Shown piece after piece: positions 6,013 through 63,955 of a stretch of DNA of 64,000 nt. Location of the stretch: contig NC_043008.1 of the NCBI RefSeq assembly GCF_006345805.1, positions 6,510,001-6,574,000 on the forward strand, in the 5' to 3' direction. This stretch comes from Octopus sinensis. Its lineage: Eukaryota. Both the position numbers and the translations under genes were made by a program. The notes under the pieces were generated by a model. That model was not told the origin of the DNA, ran no database searches, and was given only the letters and a program-made list of their open reading frames with translations. Positions within the stretch are counted from its first letter, which is position 1, and each line of letters starts with the position of its first letter.

Positions 6013-6165
6013 ATTTGGGCCACCAAGAACTGCAGATCAGTTCTGATCTTTGTGGATCTTAAAATGTCTTTTGAGGCCTCCATTAGATTTGCAAACCTTC
6101 TGGCATACACTGCATTCAAAGGTGTGCACAGACATATAGGCAGAATAGTTGGTGGGGGTTCGTTT

Positions 6166-22535: not shown

Positions 22536-22908
22536 GTTGTTTCAGTCATTTGACTGCGGCCATGCTGGAGCACCGCCTTTAGTCGAGCAAATCGAACCCG
22601 GGACTTATTCTTTGTAAGCCCAGTACTTATTCAATCGGTCTCTTTTGCTGAACCGCTAAGTGACGGGGACGTACACACACCAGCATCGGTTGTCAAGCAA
22701 TGCTGTGGGGACAAACACACACACATATATATATATACATATATACGACAGGCTTCTTTCAGTTTCCGTCTACCAAATCCACTCACAAGGCATTGGTCGG
22801 CCCGGGGCTATAGCAGAAGACACTTGCCCAAGATACCACGCAGTGGGACTGAACCCGGAACCATGTGGTTGGTTAGCAAGCTACTTACCACATAGCCACT
22901 CCTGCGCC
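22536..22908 (-). mobile_element. Family B SINE, full length
   Basis: Minus strand: GGCGCAGGAGTGGCTATGTGGTAAG head, GGTTCAGTCCC box B, CORE-like TTGGGCAAGTGTCTTC, TA/TG tract, 3' GACTGAAAC end; many CpGs retained. Confidence 0.9.
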
Positions 22909-23120: not shown

Positions 23121-24614
23121 ATAGCCTGATGGTAGTGGACCCTGCTTGTGTAGTCTGATGGTAGTGGGCAATGTATGAGGGGGGGGGGGTAGAGAAGGAG
23201 AGAGGAGTCAGTGGGAAGCATTTGAGAGGATTTGACATGAGACTAGTACACTCTGAGGAACAAAGGACAGTGTGTTGTTGAGAGAATCTGTGTGTGTGTG
23301 TGTGTGTGTGTGTGGTTAAGTGTATACACACACACACACACACATTTATATATATAGTAAAAAGGAGGAAGAGAGAAGAAACAACTGAAAACCCTTTCTT
23401 TGGATATAGTCTAAGATGTATCTGTTTGTGTGTGTGTGTGTAGAAAAGCAGTGCCAACCCAAATATTAGAGCAGGACTCCATTGTTGGCCACACATGGGT
23501 AACTGATGGAGAATGGTCAAGTATTTTCCGATTCTGAAATACAAGGTCAGTCTTTGATTATACAATTAATATGCATAAGATAAAAGATTAGATTGAATTT
23601 AATTCTCAGACTTTTAAGATGATTGAAGCTCATAATTAGAAGGTTGTTCCTCACCAAAGAATTCTGTGATAAATTATTGAAAACACGCAGCTGCTCTTAA
23701 AGAATTTTCGTTTTGTGATAGTGTTTAGTAAATTAGTATTTAAATAAAAATTGGAAATGTTTTATTTATCCATTTTCATGCTTAGATATTTAACTAGTTG
23801 GCATGAAATAGCAAGTGCTTTTATTTAGCTCCTGATATATAATATAGCTTTTATTTAGCTACTTCATAATAATATATATGCCTTATCGAGAATTTTAGGA
23901 TGTTCTTAACCTAGAAGTTAGGTGAAAATAATTGATAAAGAAATCAGTTCTTAGACATTATTGCTTCCTGGAATTTTTATTATAAAAACAAAACAGCAAT
24001 TTCTTTAATGGATTTTTCCGTTTATTTTCTTCTAAAAATTCAACATAAAATTCTCATATCAGGTTAAACAGACTCAAGATAAGGAATCTATTTCTTGCAT
24101 TTCAGCTTGTTTCATTTCTTTATTTTGGTTAAATTTCACATGGCATTAACTTCAGTTGTCTGACAGGAACTTATGTTTACAGCAGCAACTTTGGTAGCTC
24201 AGGATCAATAGACTTTCAGTTCAGCCATCCGTGACAAAATTTAATATAATTACCAGTTGGGATGTAAAAATAAATTGATCATCTTAAAGATACTAAGATT
24301 TAATTGGAAGAAGAATATTTTTAAACAAGGTATTTTTAAACACGGTGCAATTTGTTTTTAAATTTTTAAATAACTGAAGTCTTAAACATAAACAAAATAA
24401 CAACATAAACAACCAGAATATTCCGATATCAGCATGGCTTTGGCGCTATGGCTAACAGGTTTACTCTACAACAAAGCGGTTCTATGTTTGATTCCCCAGT
24501 CGAGTATCTTGGTTCCCTTATAGTCTCTGAGCAATATTTGGTGGACCGAAACTTGATAGAGGATCATCAGTCATACACATTTACACACACACACACATAA
24601 ATCATATATATATA

Positions 24615-24772
24615 TATGACGGGCTTCTTTCAGTTTCCATCTACCACATCCACTCACAAGGCTTTGGTCAGACTGATGCTATAGTAGAAGACACTTGCCC
24701 AAGGTGCCATGCAGTGGGACTGAACCATGTGGTTTGTTTGCAAGCTACTTACCACACAGCCACTCCTGCACC
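24615..24772 (-). mobile_element. Family B SINE, 5' half
   Basis: GACGGGCTTCTTTCAGTTTCC...GACACTTGCCCAAGG...ACCACACAGCCACTCCTG. Confidence 0.8.
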
Positions 24773-26807: not shown

Positions 26808-27122
26808 TTTGACCCCAGTACTTATTTTTGAAGCCTGGTATTTGTTCCATCAGTCTTTTTTGCCAAACCGCTAAGTTATGGAGATGTAAACACACCAACA
26901 CTGGTTGTCAAGTGGTGATGGGGGACAAACACAGACACGCACATAGATATATACATACATGTATATACGACAGGTTTCAGCTTCCATCAACCAAATCTAC
27001 TTACAAGGCTATGGTTGGCTCAAGACTAGAGTAGGTGACACCTGCCCAAAGTTTCACACAGTGGGATTGAACCTGGATTCATGTGTTTTGGAAGCAAGCT
27101 TCTTACCACACAGCCACTCCTG
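26808..27122 (-). mobile_element. Family B SINE
   Basis: CCAAACCGCTAAGTT...GGGACAAACAC...ACCACACAGCCACTCCTG. Confidence 0.8.
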
Positions 27123-30023: not shown

Positions 30024-30638
30024 ATCATCGCCATCATCATCGTTTAACATCCGCTTTCCATGCTAGCATGGGTTGGACGATTTTGATGGAGGGCTGGCGA
30101 ACCAGATGGCCGCACCAGGCTCCAAATTTGATCTGGCAGAGTTTCTACAGCTGGATGCCCTTCCTAACACCAACCACTCCGATAATGTAGTGGGTGCTTT
30201 TTACATGCCACTGGCATGGGGCCAGTCAGGTGGTAATGGCAATGACCTCGCTAGAATCTTTTTACACATGCCACCGGCACAGGTGCCAGTAAGGTGACAT
30301 TGGTAACAATCACACTTGTTGACCATGGTATTGCATGTAGAAATTTCCTCTCTGAGGTATAAGTCCAGGCAAGGTTTCTTATAGAAGACCAGCAGTCGCC
30401 CATGCATACCAGCCCCTCCTTTCCACACCACTGATGTTGTCCAAGGGAAAGGCAAAGGGGCCGATACAGCTTGGGACCAGTGATGTTGCAACTCATTTCT
30501 ACAGCTGAGTGAATTGGAGCAACGTGAAATAAAGTGTCTTGCTCAAGAACATGACACACAGCCTGGTCTTGCAATCGAACTTACTACCTTATGATTGTGA
30601 GTACGACACTATAACCACTGATTCATGTGTCTTCACTG
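30024..30638 (-). mobile_element. Composite SINE: family D head + family E 3' module
   Basis: Head at 30490-30638, E module with TAGGAAGGGCATCCAGCTGTAGAAAC and (GAT)n tail at ~30024-30043. Confidence 0.8.
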
Positions 30639-37289: not shown

Positions 37290-37650
37290 AAATTTTGGCA
37301 CTAGGCATGCAATTTCATCGACTCCAGTATTTTACTGGTACTTATTTTAAGGGCAAAAGGCAAGTTTGATCTTGATGAAATTTTAATTCAGAATGTAAGG
37401 ACAGATGAAAAGCTAAGCATTTTGCCTGACCTGCTAATGACTCTGTCAGCTCACCAGCTTCATTCTAGTAGTAATATTGTTTTCTGCTAGCCCTTTTAGG
37501 GAGATGGGTTAGTCAATTACATTGACCCCAGTACCGAAACCCTAAAGGATGAATGGCAAAGTTGACATTGGCAAAATTTGAACCTGGAACAAAGAAATGC
37601 TGTCAGGAATTTTGTCCAACATGTTACTCATTCTGCCAGCTCACTCTTTT
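37290..37650 (-). mobile_element. Two decayed family A SINE remnants
   Basis: Degenerate AAAGGCAAAGT.GAC / GGTACTTATTT / CTGCCAGCTCAC motifs. Confidence 0.55.
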
Positions 37651-38428
37651 CATCTTTGTGCCAATAACAAAAGCTTACCAGACAGTAGAGTCTTTGACTA
37701 CAATGTTTAACTCTAATACTTACAGAGAGGAGACACATAGCCAGATTAAGGGACCGGGTTATGAAAGTAACAGAACAAGTTACATCACAACTAATTAGAA
37801 TGAAAACTAGCAGACGAGATGCAGTGCAGTTTAGTGTCAGGGCAGGATACAAACAATATCCTCTTCCGAGTGAAACAACTACACAAGTTTTTTGCTAAAG
37901 AGTAAACCACTGTTTTCTACAGTCAGTGGTTGCTAAGATGAATGTTAAGTGTGAGTCGTACAGTCTCATACAAGCCATTCTGTGTCATTAGCTAAGCAAG
38001 AACCATCAACGTGTTTAGAGAAGAATTTAATCTGCAAGTAGGTGTCTATTGGAATTCGGTTCTCAGTGCCTCATGTATATTATAGTTCGCCAGTACTAAC
38101 AGAAGAATTTAAGCTGTTTGTAGGACTCTGTATGTCAATGACTACAGCCTACTTTGTCAGAGAATGAGATGAGAAACTGCAAAAGGTGGCAGCAAGCCGT
38201 ACATCTAGAGGGTCTCAAAGAGAGCTAAACAATACTTATAAGTTTTATTGGACAAGCCAGAGGGCAAAAACTTGTTACCAGTTGAGAAATGGCCATATGC
38301 AGGAAAAAAGAAGATAGAAATTCAATATGGTGCATCTAACGTAAACTGTAGACGCTCTGAAGGTGTAATGTAGTTGTAGAAAGGTTGATAAATAAAGAAA
38401 GACTTGTAGCAGACTGAATTGCCAAGCA

Positions 38429-38553
38429 TGAGTCATGGATTAGCCATAACCACTTTGCATCATTGGCCAATTAACTGACCAATCAGCATTGAGCCACCAT
38501 GTGATGCAACCTTCTAGAACCTTCTAGAATCCATGTGAAGGGGTTTATAAATA
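38429..38553 (+). promoter_or_regulatory. Putative heat-shock-type Pol II promoter
   Basis: TGAGTCA (38429-35); palindrome ATTGGCCAAT (38462-71); GACCAATCAG (38477-86); HSE TTCtaGAAccTTCtaGAA (38512-29); TATAAATA (38546-53). No downstream ORF recognised. Confidence 0.5.
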
Positions 38554-38963
38554 GATAAATTTTTAGCGCCGGAACTTCAGAATGTTGAAGGCTGCCGCTA
38601 CGAAAACAACATTCTTGTTTTCATTTTCCTGTTTATGCAAGAGCTTGTTTATGTAAGAGATGCACTGGGGGTGGGGTAGTGGTGGTGGTGGTGGTGGTGG
38701 TAGGTGGGAATAAGCAGGAAGAAATTTTATGAAATAAATTCCTTCTAATATTCATAGGGTTCTCTAGAAGCTGTTGATACCTTTTGTTGTTCATGGAAAA
38801 TAACCCCTACTATAGGTGGGTGCCATGAAAGCAAAGTAACCAAAATACAAAGTGGGGTGGAGTGGGGTGGGGTGGAGGGGGCAGGGGGTTGTTATCTTTA
38901 CTGGCAACAAAGGGATTCAAAGACAGCATCTGATGTTGATTGTTTGATTGATGATTTTTTTCC

Positions 38964-39184
38964 CTTGTTTCAGTCACGTGACTGTAGCCATGCTGGAGCG
39001 CCCCCTTTAGTCGAGCAAATCAACCCCAGGATTTATTCTTTGTAAGCCTAGTACTTATTCTATCGGTCTCTTTTGCCGAACCGCTAAGTTACGGGGACGT
39101 AAACACACCAGCATCGATTGTCAAACAATGTTGGGGGAACAAACACAAACTCACAAATATATAGACACACATACACATATATAC

Positions 39185-39215
<31 letters not shown>

Positions 39216-39245
39216 CACACACACACATATATATATATACATATA

Positions 39246-39277
<32 letters not shown>

Positions 39278-39437
39278 CGACGGGCTTCTTTCAGTTTCCA
39301 TCTACCAAATCCACTCACAAGGCTTTGGTCAGCCCAAGGCTATAGTAGAAGACACTTGCCGAAGGTGCCACACAGTGGGACTGAACCCAGAACCATGTGG
39401 TTCGTAAGCAAGCTACTTACCACACAGCCACTCCTAC
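38964..39437 (-). mobile_element. Family B SINE, full length with expanded TA tract
   Basis: Co-linear with 22536-22908. Confidence 0.9.
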
Positions 39438-39444
39438 ACTGTGA

Positions 39445-39760
39445 ATAAAATATGATGACAGATGGCAGAAATAAACGTTGAATGTATGATTTATGATAGA
39501 GGGGCAGAATGAGGTGAATATGCTTTGTGGCAGGGTAGATGACCAACGTAGCTCAAAGAAGCTGAGATCAAAACTAGATATAACAAGAATCTGATGTAGA
39601 CGTGGGAGGATTACAGTTGGTTAAAAATTATATTCCAAGTTAACTAAATGGAAGAAGTTGACATGAGAAAATGGTGATGGCTGACCACAAGACATTAAAG
39701 GTCATAAAAGAAATGTCAAGGGATTGCAAGCGTTGGTCAGAAATTGTCTTGGAGAAGATA
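39445..39760 (+). mobile_element. Decayed RTE LINE 3' relic
   Basis: LRSKLDITRI matches the LREKL.IR segment of the RTE at 45890-46700; many stops. Confidence 0.4.
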
Positions 39761-40230
39761 GATTCATTTGAATATGTGAAAATGGACATTAAATTGAGAA
39801 TTGTGATGCTTGTTTTAACTTTACTGAAAATAATTAAATATAGAAAGAAAATATAAAATTTCAATAAACTTTAGATTTAATCAATTTAGTTATAGTAGAA
39901 AGTTATTTTATAATTAGTGCTCTTAATTAATGAACTATGTTTTAATTTGAGATTAATTGATTAAAAAATTTTGAGAAACTGTAATTGTTTTAGTTATTAT
40001 TCAATTCTACATAAGTCTTGAATATAGTTAAAGGTATTCTGGCCATGACCACCTCATCTGTTTTCTAGATACTCTGTACTCAGAACTTATTTATCCAATG
40101 GTCCTCTTTTTCACAAGAGTGCAGAGTATCTAAAAATCTGAGAGATATTTAACTGCTATTTCTAGCAGGTTGAGAGACCACATAGAATCTTGTTCATTGT
40201 CCTTAGAGTTTTCTACATAATCAGTTGTTT

Positions 40231-40762
40231 AAAAGAGACACCATTTGGCACCATTCAAGTGTGGTCGTTACCAGCGTCGCCTTACTGGCACTTGTGCCTG
40301 TGCTAGTAGGGTGCCAAGAGCACCTTCCGAGCATGATCATTGCCAGAGCGGCTAACTGGCTTCCATGCTGGTGACACATAAAAGGGCATCATTCGAGCGT
40401 GATTGTTGTCAGAGTGGCTAACTGGCTTCCATGTCAGTGGCTCGTAAAAGGGCACCATTCGAGCGTGATCATTACCAGCGTCGCCTTACTGGCACCTATG
40501 CACGTGGAATTGTGTAAAAAGATTTGAGCGAGGTTATTGCTAGTACCACCTGACTGACTCCCATGCCGGTGGCACATAAAAAGCACCCACTACATTCTTG
40601 GAGTGGTTGGCGTTAGGAAGGGCATACAGCTGTAGAAACTCTGCCAGATCAAGATTGGAGCCTGGTGTGGCTATCTGGTTCACCAGCCCTCAGTCAAAAT
40701 CGTCCAACCCATGCTAGCATGGAAAGTGGACGTTAAACGATGATGATGATGATGATGATGAT
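40231..40762 (+). mobile_element. Family E element with internal ~50-bp subrepeats
   Basis: Repeated GGCACCATTCGAGCGTGATC..ACCAG units, GGCGTTAGGAAGGGCAT, CCCATGCTAGCATGGAAAG, (GAT)8 tail. Confidence 0.85.
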
Positions 40763-52424: not shown

Positions 52425-53118
<694 letters not shown>

Positions 53119-55291: not shown

Positions 55292-55451
55292 CAGGTTTGG
55301 CTGCGTGGTAAGAAGCTTACTTTCTAAACCACATGGCTTCAGGTTCAGTGCCACTGTGTGGCACCTTGGGCAAGTGTCTTCTACTATAGCATCGGGCCAC
55401 CCAAAGCCTTGTGAGCAGATTTGGTAGATGATAACTAAAGGAAGCCCTTCT

Positions 55452-55510
<59 letters not shown>
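55292..55510 (+). mobile_element. Family B SINE 5' half (3' half at 57180-57378)
   Basis: Head, box B and CORE-like motif, then a TA/CA tract interrupted by the mariner. Confidence 0.8.
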
Positions 55511-62031: not shown

Positions 62032-62174
62032 TCATTTTTACAGTCGAGTGAACTGGTGCAACATGAAATAAAGTGTCTTGCTCAAGAACATAATATGCAG
62101 CCTGGTCCGGGAATCGAACTCACAACCTCATGATTGTAAGCTCAATTCTCTGACTACTGAGCCATGCGCCTTCA
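62032..62174 (-). mobile_element. Family D SINE head
   Basis: GTGTCTTGCTCAAGAACA...GGGAATCGAACTCAC...GCCATGCGCCTTCAC. Confidence 0.8.
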
Positions 62175-62212
62175 CTACAAAGTGGGTATATATATATGTG
62201 TGTGTGTGTGTG

Positions 62213-62350
62213 TCTCCTACCCTGATGTAATCTCCAGGGATACTAGCATCCAGCAACAGGACCTCCGCAATGCCATGATGGACCATGAAGTTTGGCGTAG
62301 CACGGTAAATTCCATTGTCTCAACCACAGTCGAACAATGATGATGATGAT
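62213..62350 (+). mobile_element. 5'-truncated RTE LINE 3' end
   Basis: Same family as 5827-6012 (SYPDVISRDT...STTVEQ* plus (GAT)n). Confidence 0.8.
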
Positions 62351-63319: not shown

Positions 63320-63955
63320 ATCATCATCATCATCATCATCGTTTAACGTCTGTTTTCCATTTTGGCATGGGTTGGACGGTTAAACTGGGAACTGGCAAGC
63401 CAGGAGGCTGCATCAGGCTCCAATCTGATCTGTCAATGTTTCTACACCTGGATGCCAACCACTCCAAGAGTGTAGTGGGTGCTTCAATATTTCCCTTTTT
63501 AATTATTATTACCTCATCATCATCATCATCATCATCATATCTGTTTTCTATGCTACCATGGGTTGGATGGTTTGAATGAGGCCTGGACAGCCAGCGGGTG
63601 CACCAGGCTCCAATTTCGTCCGACAGAGTTTCTACAGCTGGATGCCCTTCCTAACGCCAACCACTCCGAGTGTGTAGTGGGGACTTTTTACGTGCTAGTA
63701 GCACAGGGGCCAGGAAAGTAGGCCTGGCAATGATCACGTTTGGATGGTGCTTTTTATGTGCCACTGACACAGGAGCCAGTCAGGGGTTACTGGCATTGGT
63801 CATGATCGCTTGGTGATTTTTATGTACCACCAGCACTGGAGCCAGTAAGGTGGGCCTGGCAATGAACCCGTTCAGATGGTGCTTTCTACATGGCACTAGC
63901 ACAGGAGCCAGTCAGGCAGACTTGGCATCAACCACGTTTGGATGCTGCTTTGTTA
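63320..63955 (-). mobile_element. Two family E modules in tandem
   Basis: 63320-63485 and 63514-63955, each starting with (CAT)n; the second has the ~50-bp subrepeats. Confidence 0.8.

What the first reader, a model, noticed from the sequence alone, without database searches (positions are those of the whole stretch)
38429..38614. Orphan, textbook heat-shock promoter with no recognisable gene behind it
Seen within 125 bp: AP-1 site TGAGTCA, palindromic double CCAAT (ATTGGCCAAT), full NF-Y-type GACCAATCAG, a perfect four-unit HSE (TTC-GAA-TTC-GAA at 5-bp period, plus a fifth imperfect CAA) bracketed by CCATGTGA direct repeats, and TATAAATA 16 bp later. About 30 bp downstream (TCAG, ~38578) an 8-bp stem GAATGTTG/CAACATTC (38580-87 / 38607-14) would form the 5' end of the RNA. 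Established: three or more alternating nGAAn units just upstream of TATA is the canonical HSF-bound hsp promoter layout. No Hsp ORF follows. Inference: a heat-inducible non-coding RNA, an alternative first exon, or a stress-responsive TE terminal repeat (TGTAGCAG at 38405 and CCGCTACG at 38595 hint at a ~200-bp solo-LTR-like unit, TSD not convincing). If multi-copy, it would spread heat-inducible promoters through the genome.
Basis: partly seen in the sequence, partly recalled or inferred. Interest (0 to 1): 0.7.

Follow-up and report, generated by a model that had tools for sequence, protein, structure and literature searches.

The report
Orphan heat-shock-type promoter, target unknown
A compact, textbook-looking heat-shock promoter really is present, alone in repeat-rich DNA with no recognisable gene, but this kind of element is well known and the sequence alone cannot show what it drives: a distant gene, a non-coding RNA or nothing.

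Summary
There is an AP-1 site, three CCAAT/ATTGG boxes, a perfect four-unit HSE and TATAAATA 16 bp after the HSE, all within 125 bp. In 500 Mb of composition-matched random sequence, a perfect four-unit HSE occurred 81 times. A TATA box lay beside it 5 times, and two or more CCAAT boxes were never present as well. The HSE is an exact 10-bp tandem duplication (CCTTCTAGAA x2).

The cluster sits in a 1.37-kb island that has no second copy in the window, between two SINE-like repeats. The surrounding DNA is gene-free and rich in transposons. No Pfam domain or chaperone-like exon lies on the + strand for 25 kb downstream, nor on the - strand for 24 kb upstream.

A 74-nt leader ending at a GTAAGA splice donor is plausible. 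The 5' hairpin is weak.

The most likely reading is an HSF-driven Pol II promoter for a non-coding first exon, belonging either to a distant gene or to a lncRNA. A solo LTR or other transposon-derived promoter remains a serious rival. Copy number, orthology and expression could not be tested here. This is a known kind of element, of modest interest.

The parts
38429..38435 (.). AP-1/TRE palindrome TGAGTCA, about -150 from the predicted start site
   Evidence: Read directly.
38462..38471 (.). Palindromic double CCAAT box, ATTGGCCAAT
   Evidence: Read directly.
38477..38486 (+). NF-Y-type CCAAT box, GACCAATCAG, about -100
   Evidence: CCAATCAG occurs only once in the window.
38497..38504 (+). 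CCATGTGA (E-box-like CATGTG), left copy of the 8-bp direct repeat that brackets the HSE
   Evidence: D12. The motif is not enriched window-wide.
38507..38529 (.). Heat-shock element with four perfect alternating units, TTC-GAA-TTC-GAA (38512-38529), plus an imperfect CAA unit (38507-38509). It is built from an exact tandem duplication of CCTTCTAGAA (38510-38529).
   Evidence: (D10). Random expectation is about 0.010 per 64 kb.
38531..38538 (+). CCATGTGA, right copy of the direct repeat
   Evidence: D12.
38546..38553 (+). TATA box, TATAAATA, 16 bp downstream of the HSE
38577..38582 (+). Initiator-like TCAGAA. The predicted start site is A38579, 33 bp after the first T of the TATA box. This is inferred, not measured.
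   Evidence: The spacing rule comes from general knowledge of TATA promoters.
38579..38652 (+). Putative non-coding first exon of 74 nt. It contains only a 24-codon ORF starting at 38582, and a 9-bp stem at its 5' end (38579-38587 with 38607-38615).
   Evidence: (I8). Folding gives z = +0.29 for the leader and z = -2.26 for the hairpin alone.
38653..38658 (+). Candidate 5' splice site, TAT|GTAAGA. A second candidate, GTAGGT, lies at 38700-38705.
   Evidence: Read. Consensus match only, with no RNA evidence.
38733..38754 (+). AATAAA (38733-38738) followed by CA at 38753-38754. This would be the polyadenylation site of an alternative unspliced RNA of about 175 nt. The hexamer is common in this AT-rich DNA.
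   Evidence: Inference only.
37584..38953 (.). A 1.37-kb island with no other copy in the window. It holds the whole promoter and leader and is flanked on both sides by SINE-like repeats.
   Evidence: blastn map, nhmmer with no hit, and blastn of 38000-38700.
38950..39439 (+). A SINE-like repeat with an internal (AT)n microsatellite, beginning about 370 bp downstream of the predicted start site. Its 5' end carries the family's own T-rich tract plus a TTTCAG acceptor-like site.
   Evidence: One search shows copies at 22537-22903, 26812-27121, 24597-24771, 52434-53055 and 55298-55488. The starts are aligned.

Best explanation
This is a complete RNA polymerase II promoter of the heat-shock class. 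The proposed mechanism has three parts.

1. On proteotoxic stress an HSF trimer, or two adjacent trimers, would bind the four-unit HSE at about -67 to -50.
2. NF-Y on the CCAAT boxes (about -100 to -117) and AP-1 (about -150) would keep the promoter accessible.
3. TBP on TATAAATA would fix initiation on the + strand near A38579.

The transcript starts with a short non-coding leader. That leader is either spliced from the GTAAGA donor at 38653 to exons that are not recognisable within the next 25 kb, or it ends early after AATAAA at 38733. The product is therefore a non-coding first exon of a distant or lineage-specific gene, or a stress-inducible lncRNA. It is not a classical chaperone gene in cis.

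Shown: the motifs, their geometry, their improbability by chance, uniqueness within the window, and the absence of coding exons. Inferred: HSF binding, the start site, splicing and heat inducibility.
For: - Motif positions and spacing match the canonical proximal HSE-TATA layout.
- Random expectation for the composite is essentially zero: 81 HSEs, 5 with a TATA box and 0 with CCAAT boxes as well, in 500 Mb.
- The island is single-copy in the window, as expected for a host promoter.
- A consensus-like GT donor lies 74 nt after the predicted start site.
- No ORF longer than 24 codons opens the transcript.
- No Pfam family was found among + strand fragments from 38560 to 64000, and a chaperone panel gave no hit.
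- No Rfam family was found.
- In mollusc HSP70 promoters the HSE nearest the TATA box is described as the key element (PMC6337134).
Against: - Strongly heat-induced genes are usually compact, so a first intron longer than 25 kb would be unusual for them.
- The identical N positions in the two HSE half-repeats suggest a recent duplication rather than long-term conservation.
- Transposon insertions start 370 bp downstream.
- There is no CpG enrichment at the promoter.
- There is no RNA, ChIP or cross-species evidence of any kind.
- In metagenome contigs, the same exact HSE-TATA pattern was mostly LTR-borne and was never next to a chaperone gene.
Confidence: 0.45

Rival explanations
1. A transposon-derived promoter, most likely a solo LTR (U3 with AP-1, CCAAT, HSE and TATA; R with AATAAA) of a heat-responsive LTR retrotransposon family, or another HSE-carrying element. 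It would be left in intergenic DNA after loss of the internal region.
For: - Enhancer, CCAAT, TATA and AATAAA packed into about 330 bp, with no gene behind them, is the classic LTR layout.
- A TG...CA pair at 38043-38754 is flanked by TAGG on both sides and has 9 of 12 terminal inverted repeat positions.
- HSE-bearing LTRs are documented in Arabidopsis ONSEN and in the flatworm Macrostomum lignano, and HSE-bearing Helitrons in C. elegans (PMC12801592).
In the one contig examined in full, the family's HSE blocks flank the gag and pol of a Ty3/gypsy chromovirus.
Against: - There is no second copy in 64 kb, even by nhmmer.
- The TG...CA pair with its flanking repeat and terminal inverted repeats is compatible with chance: 2.7% of shuffles and 12% of real control windows show one.
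- There is no primer binding site, polypurine tract, gag, RT or integrase anywhere in the window apart from mariner remnants.
- With the LTR ending at 38754, U5 would be almost zero length.
Confidence: 0.28
2. A non-functional or decaying motif cluster. Either it is a relic promoter whose gene was lost or displaced by rearrangement and transposon insertion, or a minimal HSE-like palindrome was made 'perfect' by one recent 10-bp slippage next to a fortuitous TATA box.
For: - The four-unit HSE is one exact duplication of CCTTCTAGAA (D10).
- Each motif alone is at chance frequency in the window.
- There are no exons within 25 kb, and transposons lie immediately downstream.
- TATAAA and AATAAA are frequent in DNA with 34% GC.
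Against: The co-occurrence and correct order, spacing and orientation of AP-1, three CCAAT boxes, the HSE, the TATA box and an initiator-like site were not seen once in 500 Mb of simulated sequence. All elements are intact, with no sign of decay.
Confidence: 0.17
3. The true 5' end of a classical chaperone gene (Hsp70/Hsc70, Hsp90 or DnaJ type) with a non-coding exon 1, whose coding exons lie beyond the window end, more than 25 kb away.
For: - Hsc70- and Hsp90-type genes in animals often have a non-coding first exon and an intron in the 5' UTR (general knowledge).
- The donor site lies 74 nt after the predicted start site.
- The genome looks transposon-rich with long non-coding stretches.
Against: No HSP70, HSP90, HSP20, DnaJ, Cpn60, Cpn10 or ubiquitin signal appears anywhere in the window, by Pfam or tblastn. 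Chaperone genes are typically compact.
Confidence: 0.1

Closest known systems
Proximal HSE-TATA promoters of inducible hsp genes (Drosophila hsp70/hsp83 type; mollusc HSP70, for example Haliotis diversicolor, PMC6337134)
   Same: Three or more contiguous inverted nGAAn units lie directly upstream of a TATA box, with CCAAT boxes further upstream. The geometry of about -50 to -67 for the HSE and -33 for the TATA box also matches.
   Different: No chaperone coding sequence follows within 25 kb. The HSE is a fresh-looking exact 10-bp duplication. Inducibility is untested.
HSE-bearing LTRs of heat-activated retrotransposons (Arabidopsis ONSEN; Macrostomum lignano Mag, CsRN1 and Gmr1 families, PMC12801592), and the chromovirus family found here in metagenome contigs (L018 and relatives)
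   Same: Canonical HSEs lie just upstream of a TATA box and start site in a compact promoter module that stands without a host gene. The HSE arrays are built from 10-bp tandem units.
   Different: Here there is a single copy in the window, no gag, pol, primer binding site or polypurine tract, and the termini are not convincing. There is no sequence similarity to those families outside the motif itself.
Drosophila hsr-omega (93D) heat-inducible lncRNA locus
   Same: An HSE/TATA promoter drives a transcript with only a tiny ORF (24 codons here; 23-27 in hsr-omega, from memory) and a possible intron.
   Different: There is no array of 280-bp-type tandem repeats downstream, only microsatellites and SINEs. 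There is no sequence relationship, and expression is unknown.
C. elegans Helitron1_CE carrying HSEs (cited in PMC12801592)
   Same: The concept of a mobile element distributing HSF sites.
   Different: Helitron termini were not examined here, and no multi-copy evidence was found.

Membership tests
HSF-dependent heat-shock promoter (HSE-TATA class) | At least three contiguous, alternately oriented nGAAn units at 5-bp period | tested here: met
   Four perfect units at 38512-38529 plus one imperfect unit.
HSF-dependent heat-shock promoter (HSE-TATA class) | HSE within about 100 bp upstream of a TATA box and start site, in the correct order | tested here: met
   The HSE ends 16 bp before TATAAATA, and an initiator-like TCAG lies 33 bp after the TATA start.
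HSF-dependent heat-shock promoter (HSE-TATA class) | HSF occupancy and heat-induced initiation | not testable with these tools
   No expression or ChIP data, and no eukaryotic read or genome collection, were available.
HSF-dependent heat-shock promoter (HSE-TATA class) | Drives a chaperone or co-chaperone gene | tested here: not met
   No Pfam family was found on the + strand from 38560 to 64000.
Solo LTR of an LTR retrotransposon | TG...CA termini with short inverted repeats, flanked by a 4-6 bp target-site duplication | tested here: inconclusive
The best pair is 38043-38754 (TAGG flanks, 9 of 12 inverted repeat positions). Such a pair is found in 2.7% of shuffles and 12% of control windows.
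Solo LTR of an LTR retrotransposon | Multiple copies in the genome | tested here: inconclusive
   No other copy exists in the 64-kb window.
Full-length LTR retrotransposon (5' LTR) | Primer binding site after the LTR, internal gag/pol, and a second LTR | tested here: not met
   There are no gag, RT, RNase H or integrase domains in the window, no second copy, and no TGG-type primer binding site after 38754.
hsr-omega-like heat-inducible lncRNA locus | HSE promoter, no long ORF, and a long tandem-repeat tract in the transcription unit | tested here: not met
   The promoter and the lack of an ORF are met. No tandem array other than microsatellites lies downstream.
Hsc70/Hsp90-type gene with non-coding exon 1 | Short non-coding exon, GT donor, and a coding sequence in downstream exons | tested here: not met
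   A candidate donor lies at 38653, but no chaperone exon exists in 25 kb. Sequence beyond the window could not be examined.
Known structured RNA gene (Rfam) | Match to a covariance model at the gathering score | tested here: not met
   There were 0 matches in the window. Only sub-threshold microsatellite artefacts appeared in 38300-40300. No tRNA was found.

The most novel reading that the evidence does not exclude
The locus is the start of a heat-inducible, HSF-driven long non-coding RNA, a functional analogue of Drosophila hsr-omega, in what looks like a cephalopod-type genome. Alternatively, it is one copy of an as yet undescribed HSE-bearing mobile element that seeds heat-inducible promoters through that genome.
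Probability: 0.25. Interest if true: 0.5.

Novelty: new member of a known kind. Interest (0 to 1): 0.3.

Why it matters
If the promoter fires on heat shock, it marks a stress-induced transcript that gene annotation based on protein homology would miss. It would also be a compact native heat-inducible promoter, which could be useful as a genetic tool in the source organism. If it proves to be multi-copy, it would add a further animal lineage to the few cases (ONSEN, Macrostomum LTR retrotransposons, the C. elegans Helitron) in which mobile elements hijack HSF. As it stands, it is a well-formed example of a known promoter class whose target is unknown.

Tried and rejected
**Coding content**
- ORF listing found no Hsp-like ORF.
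- Pfam scans covered all stop-free fragments. The + strand downstream and the - strand upstream gave nothing. The rest of the window gave only mariner remnants, one C2H2 finger and weak stray hits.

**RNA**
- Rfam at gathering threshold and a sensitive scan found only microsatellite artefacts. There were no tRNAs.
- The hairpin as a special 5' structure is rejected as weak.

**Transposon tests**
A systematic scan for TG...CA pairs with a flanking target-site duplication and terminal inverted repeats was compatible with chance.
- The hsr-omega-type repeat array is absent.
- There is no CpG island.

**Access to the source genome or transcripts**
- Exact-protein look-ups of three window ORFs were not on record.
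- A homology search with the mariner fragment gave one short hit from an unannotated public read assembly and no taxon.
I then dropped the idea as wasteful.
- A metagenome scan for the full CCAAT-HSE-TATA composite gave 0 hits.
- Literature searches for exact sequence strings of the promoter and of the SINE found nothing relevant.
- Octopus-specific literature on HSE promoters or HSP70 gene structure gave nothing usable.

The identification of the source as cephalopod- or octopus-like rests only on my memory of its SINE families. It is unverified.

Full report
**Observation**

The window is AT-rich (34.5% GC), CpG-depleted (observed/expected 0.40) eukaryotic DNA, full of microsatellites and short interspersed repeats. 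From memory, the repeats resemble octopus SINE families. I could not verify this.

- TGAGTCA at 38429-38435.
- ATTGGCCAAT at 38462-38471.
- GACCAATCAG at 38477-38486.
- CCATGTGA at 38497-38504 and 38531-38538.
- The HSE, TTCtaGAAccTTCtaGAA, at 38512-38529, preceded by an imperfect CAA unit.
- TATAAATA at 38546-38553, 16 bp after the HSE.
- TCAG at 38577-38580.
- An inverted repeat that is 9 bp long, not 8, at 38579-38587 and 38607-38615.

The HSE is an exact tandem duplication of the 10-mer CCTTCTAGAA (D10). Even its 'free' N positions are identical, which points to a recent slippage event that turned a two- to three-unit site into a four-unit one.

**Chance**

Taken one at a time, the motifs occur at roughly chance frequency in the window:
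- TTCTAGAA: 3 found, 1.9 expected.
- CCAATCAG: 1 found, 2.5 expected.
- CCATGTGA: 4 found, 2.8 expected.

The combination is a different matter. In 500 Mb of first-order Markov sequence with the window's composition I counted 81 perfect four-unit HSEs, about 0.010 per 64 kb. Five had TATAAA 10-30 bp to one side. None also had two or more CCAAT/ATTGG boxes within 100 bp on the other side. A genome of a few gigabases would therefore yield about one such composite, or fewer, by chance. The order, spacing and orientation are also those of a working promoter: HSE at about -67 to -50, TATA at -33, CCAAT at about -100 to -117, and AP-1 at about -150, all relative to A38579. I take the cluster to be a real promoter module, or a recent derivative of one.

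**What lies behind it**

No ORF of 90 aa or more in 30-64 kb looks like a chaperone. The longest ORF opening the predicted transcript is 24 codons.

I translated all stop-free fragments and scanned them against Pfam:
- + strand, 38560-64000, fragments of 30 aa or more: 0 families at E <= 1.
- - strand, 14000-38560, to test for a divergent partner gene: 0 families.
- The remaining strands and regions: only mariner transposase remnants (Transposase_1, HTH_48), a lone C2H2 finger at 6052-6114 on the - strand, and a few weak stray hits.

Rfam and ARAGORN found no RNA gene.

'Orphan' is therefore correct for 25 kb downstream and for the rest of the window. The window is transposon-rich, gene-free DNA, either intergenic or inside a very long intron.

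**Local anatomy**

A blastn self-map and nhmmer show that 37584-38953 has no other copy in the window. On both sides lie members of SINE-like families that recur many times in the window.

The downstream repeat begins at about 38950, only about 370 bp after the predicted start site. Its own consensus supplies the T-rich tract and TTTCAG that looks like a splice acceptor.

Within the island the predicted transcript begins at A38579. After 74 nt there is a donor-like TAT|GTAAGA at 38653, and a second one, GTAGGT, at 38700. AATAAA at 38733-38738 followed by CA at 38753-38754 would allow a short unspliced RNA of about 175 nt, but this hexamer is common in such AT-rich DNA.

The 5' hairpin is -8.5 kcal/mol with z = -2.26 when folded alone. 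The 74-nt leader as a whole folds no better than shuffles, z = +0.29. I give the hairpin no weight.

**Transposon hypothesis**

They match as inverted repeats at only 6 of 8 positions.

A systematic scan for TG...CA pairs bracketing the promoter with a 4-6 bp target-site duplication gave one noteworthy candidate: 38043-38754, with TAGG on both sides and 9 of 12 terminal inverted repeat positions. An equally good pair occurs in 2.7% of shuffles and in 23 of 194 control windows of the real sequence.

There is no primer binding site, polypurine tract, gag, RT or integrase nearby, and no second copy. A full-length element is excluded. A solo LTR is neither supported nor excluded.

**An external yardstick**

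No eukaryotic genome collection was available, so I scanned the metagenome contigs. The full CCAAT-HSE-TATA composite gave 0 hits.

The core pattern, TTCTAGAANNTTCTAGAA-N12-20-TATAAATA, gave 27 contigs. About 20 belong to one multi-copy family with arrays of TTCTAGAA units, a TATA box and a conserved leader. None of the 27 contigs carries a chaperone gene.

In L018, two such HSE/TATA blocks lie 5.3 kb apart. They flank a gag ORF (Retrotrans_gag, Ty3_capsid) and a pol ORF (RVT_1, RNase H, rve, Chromo, SH3_Tf2-1). That is, they are the LTRs of a Ty3/gypsy chromovirus.

This family shares nothing with the window beyond the motif. It does show that, by copy number, this exact 'textbook hsp promoter' pattern is more often LTR-borne than Hsp-borne. 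That raises the prior for the transposon reading.

The literature agrees. HSE-bearing, heat-activated LTRs are established for Arabidopsis ONSEN and for four families in the flatworm Macrostomum lignano, and a C. elegans Helitron carries HSEs (PMC12801592).

**Mechanism and weighting**

All the readings in which the promoter works share one mechanism. Stress-activated HSF trimers bind the HSE. NF-Y and AP-1 sit upstream. TBP binds the TATA box. Pol II initiates near 38579 on the + strand. They differ in origin and product. My weights are:
- 0.45: a functional host promoter whose transcript begins with a non-coding exon, belonging to a distant or unrecognisable gene or to a lncRNA.
- 0.28: a solo LTR or other transposon-derived promoter.
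- 0.17: a non-functional or relic cluster sharpened by one recent duplication.
- 0.10: the specific case of a classical chaperone gene whose coding exons lie beyond the window.

The pieces of evidence that would decide among these were not obtainable here: genome-wide copy number, orthologous conservation, heat-shock RNA 5' ends and HSF occupancy. Exact-protein look-ups for window ORFs were not on record, and the protein homology search returned only one short unannotated hit.

**Verdict**

This is a new instance of a well-known kind of element, an HSE/CCAAT/TATA promoter, whose target is unresolved. Interest is modest. It would rise if heat-induced transcription of a non-coding RNA, or multi-copy mobile spread, were demonstrated.

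Noticed in passing
L018:1-7055 (also L001-L003, L006-L009, L011, L013-L015, L019, L021, L022, L024-L026): Metagenome contigs from one set of ENA assemblies hold a multi-copy family with arrays of TTCTAGAA HSE units plus TATAAATA. In L018, two such blocks 5.3 kb apart flank the gag and pol (RT, RNase H, integrase, chromodomain) of a Ty3/gypsy chromovirus. This appears to be a heat-shock-type LTR promoter in an unidentified eukaryote.
   Followed up: partly
window:55616-56207 (-): Remnants of a Mos1/mariner-type transposase (Pfam Transposase_1 at 5e-18; an HTH_48 hit at 5.8e-15 lies on the - strand fragments scanned in the same call, not localised). The reading frame is broken into fragments.
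   Followed up: partly
window:38973-38982: This copy of the SINE-like repeat reads GTCACGTGAC, a perfect palindromic E-box and CLEAR-type motif. Three other copies in the window read GTCATTTGAC. The two substitutions create CACGTG and a CpG about 400 bp downstream of the predicted start site.
   Followed up: partly
window:38662-38707 and 38852-38888 (+): G-rich tracts, a GGT repeat run and GGGGTGGAGTGGGGTGGGGTGGAGGGGGCAGGGGG, lie on the non-template strand just downstream of the putative donor. They are G-quadruplex-prone sequence in the promoter-proximal region.
   Followed up: no
window:35420-36205: A tandem array of a 64-bp unit, 12.5 copies at 91% identity, built from TA/TG/CA-rich sequence about 2.3 kb upstream of the promoter.
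   Followed up: no
window:49214-49626: A very long (ATC)n microsatellite of about 138 copies, which creates spurious 140-190-aa ORFs in several frames.
   Followed up: no
window:6052-6114 (-): An isolated C2H2 zinc-finger motif (FECSVCQKVCKSNGGLKRHFKIH; Pfam zf-C2H2 at 3e-5) inside a 42-aa stop-free fragment. It is probably a pseudogene or a transposon fragment.
   Followed up: no
window:5841-6251 (-) and 62161-62337 (+): Two copies of the same retroelement 3' coding tail (...SYPDVISRDTxIQQQDLRNAMMDxEVWR...TVEQ). A similar tail, ...SRDCKRWSEIV..., lies at 39662-39853 on the + strand, 1 kb downstream of the promoter.
   Followed up: no
window:40316-40493 and 63684-63951: Short arrays of 66-bp tandem repeats, probably parts of one repeat family that recurs at 30184-30318.
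   Followed up: no
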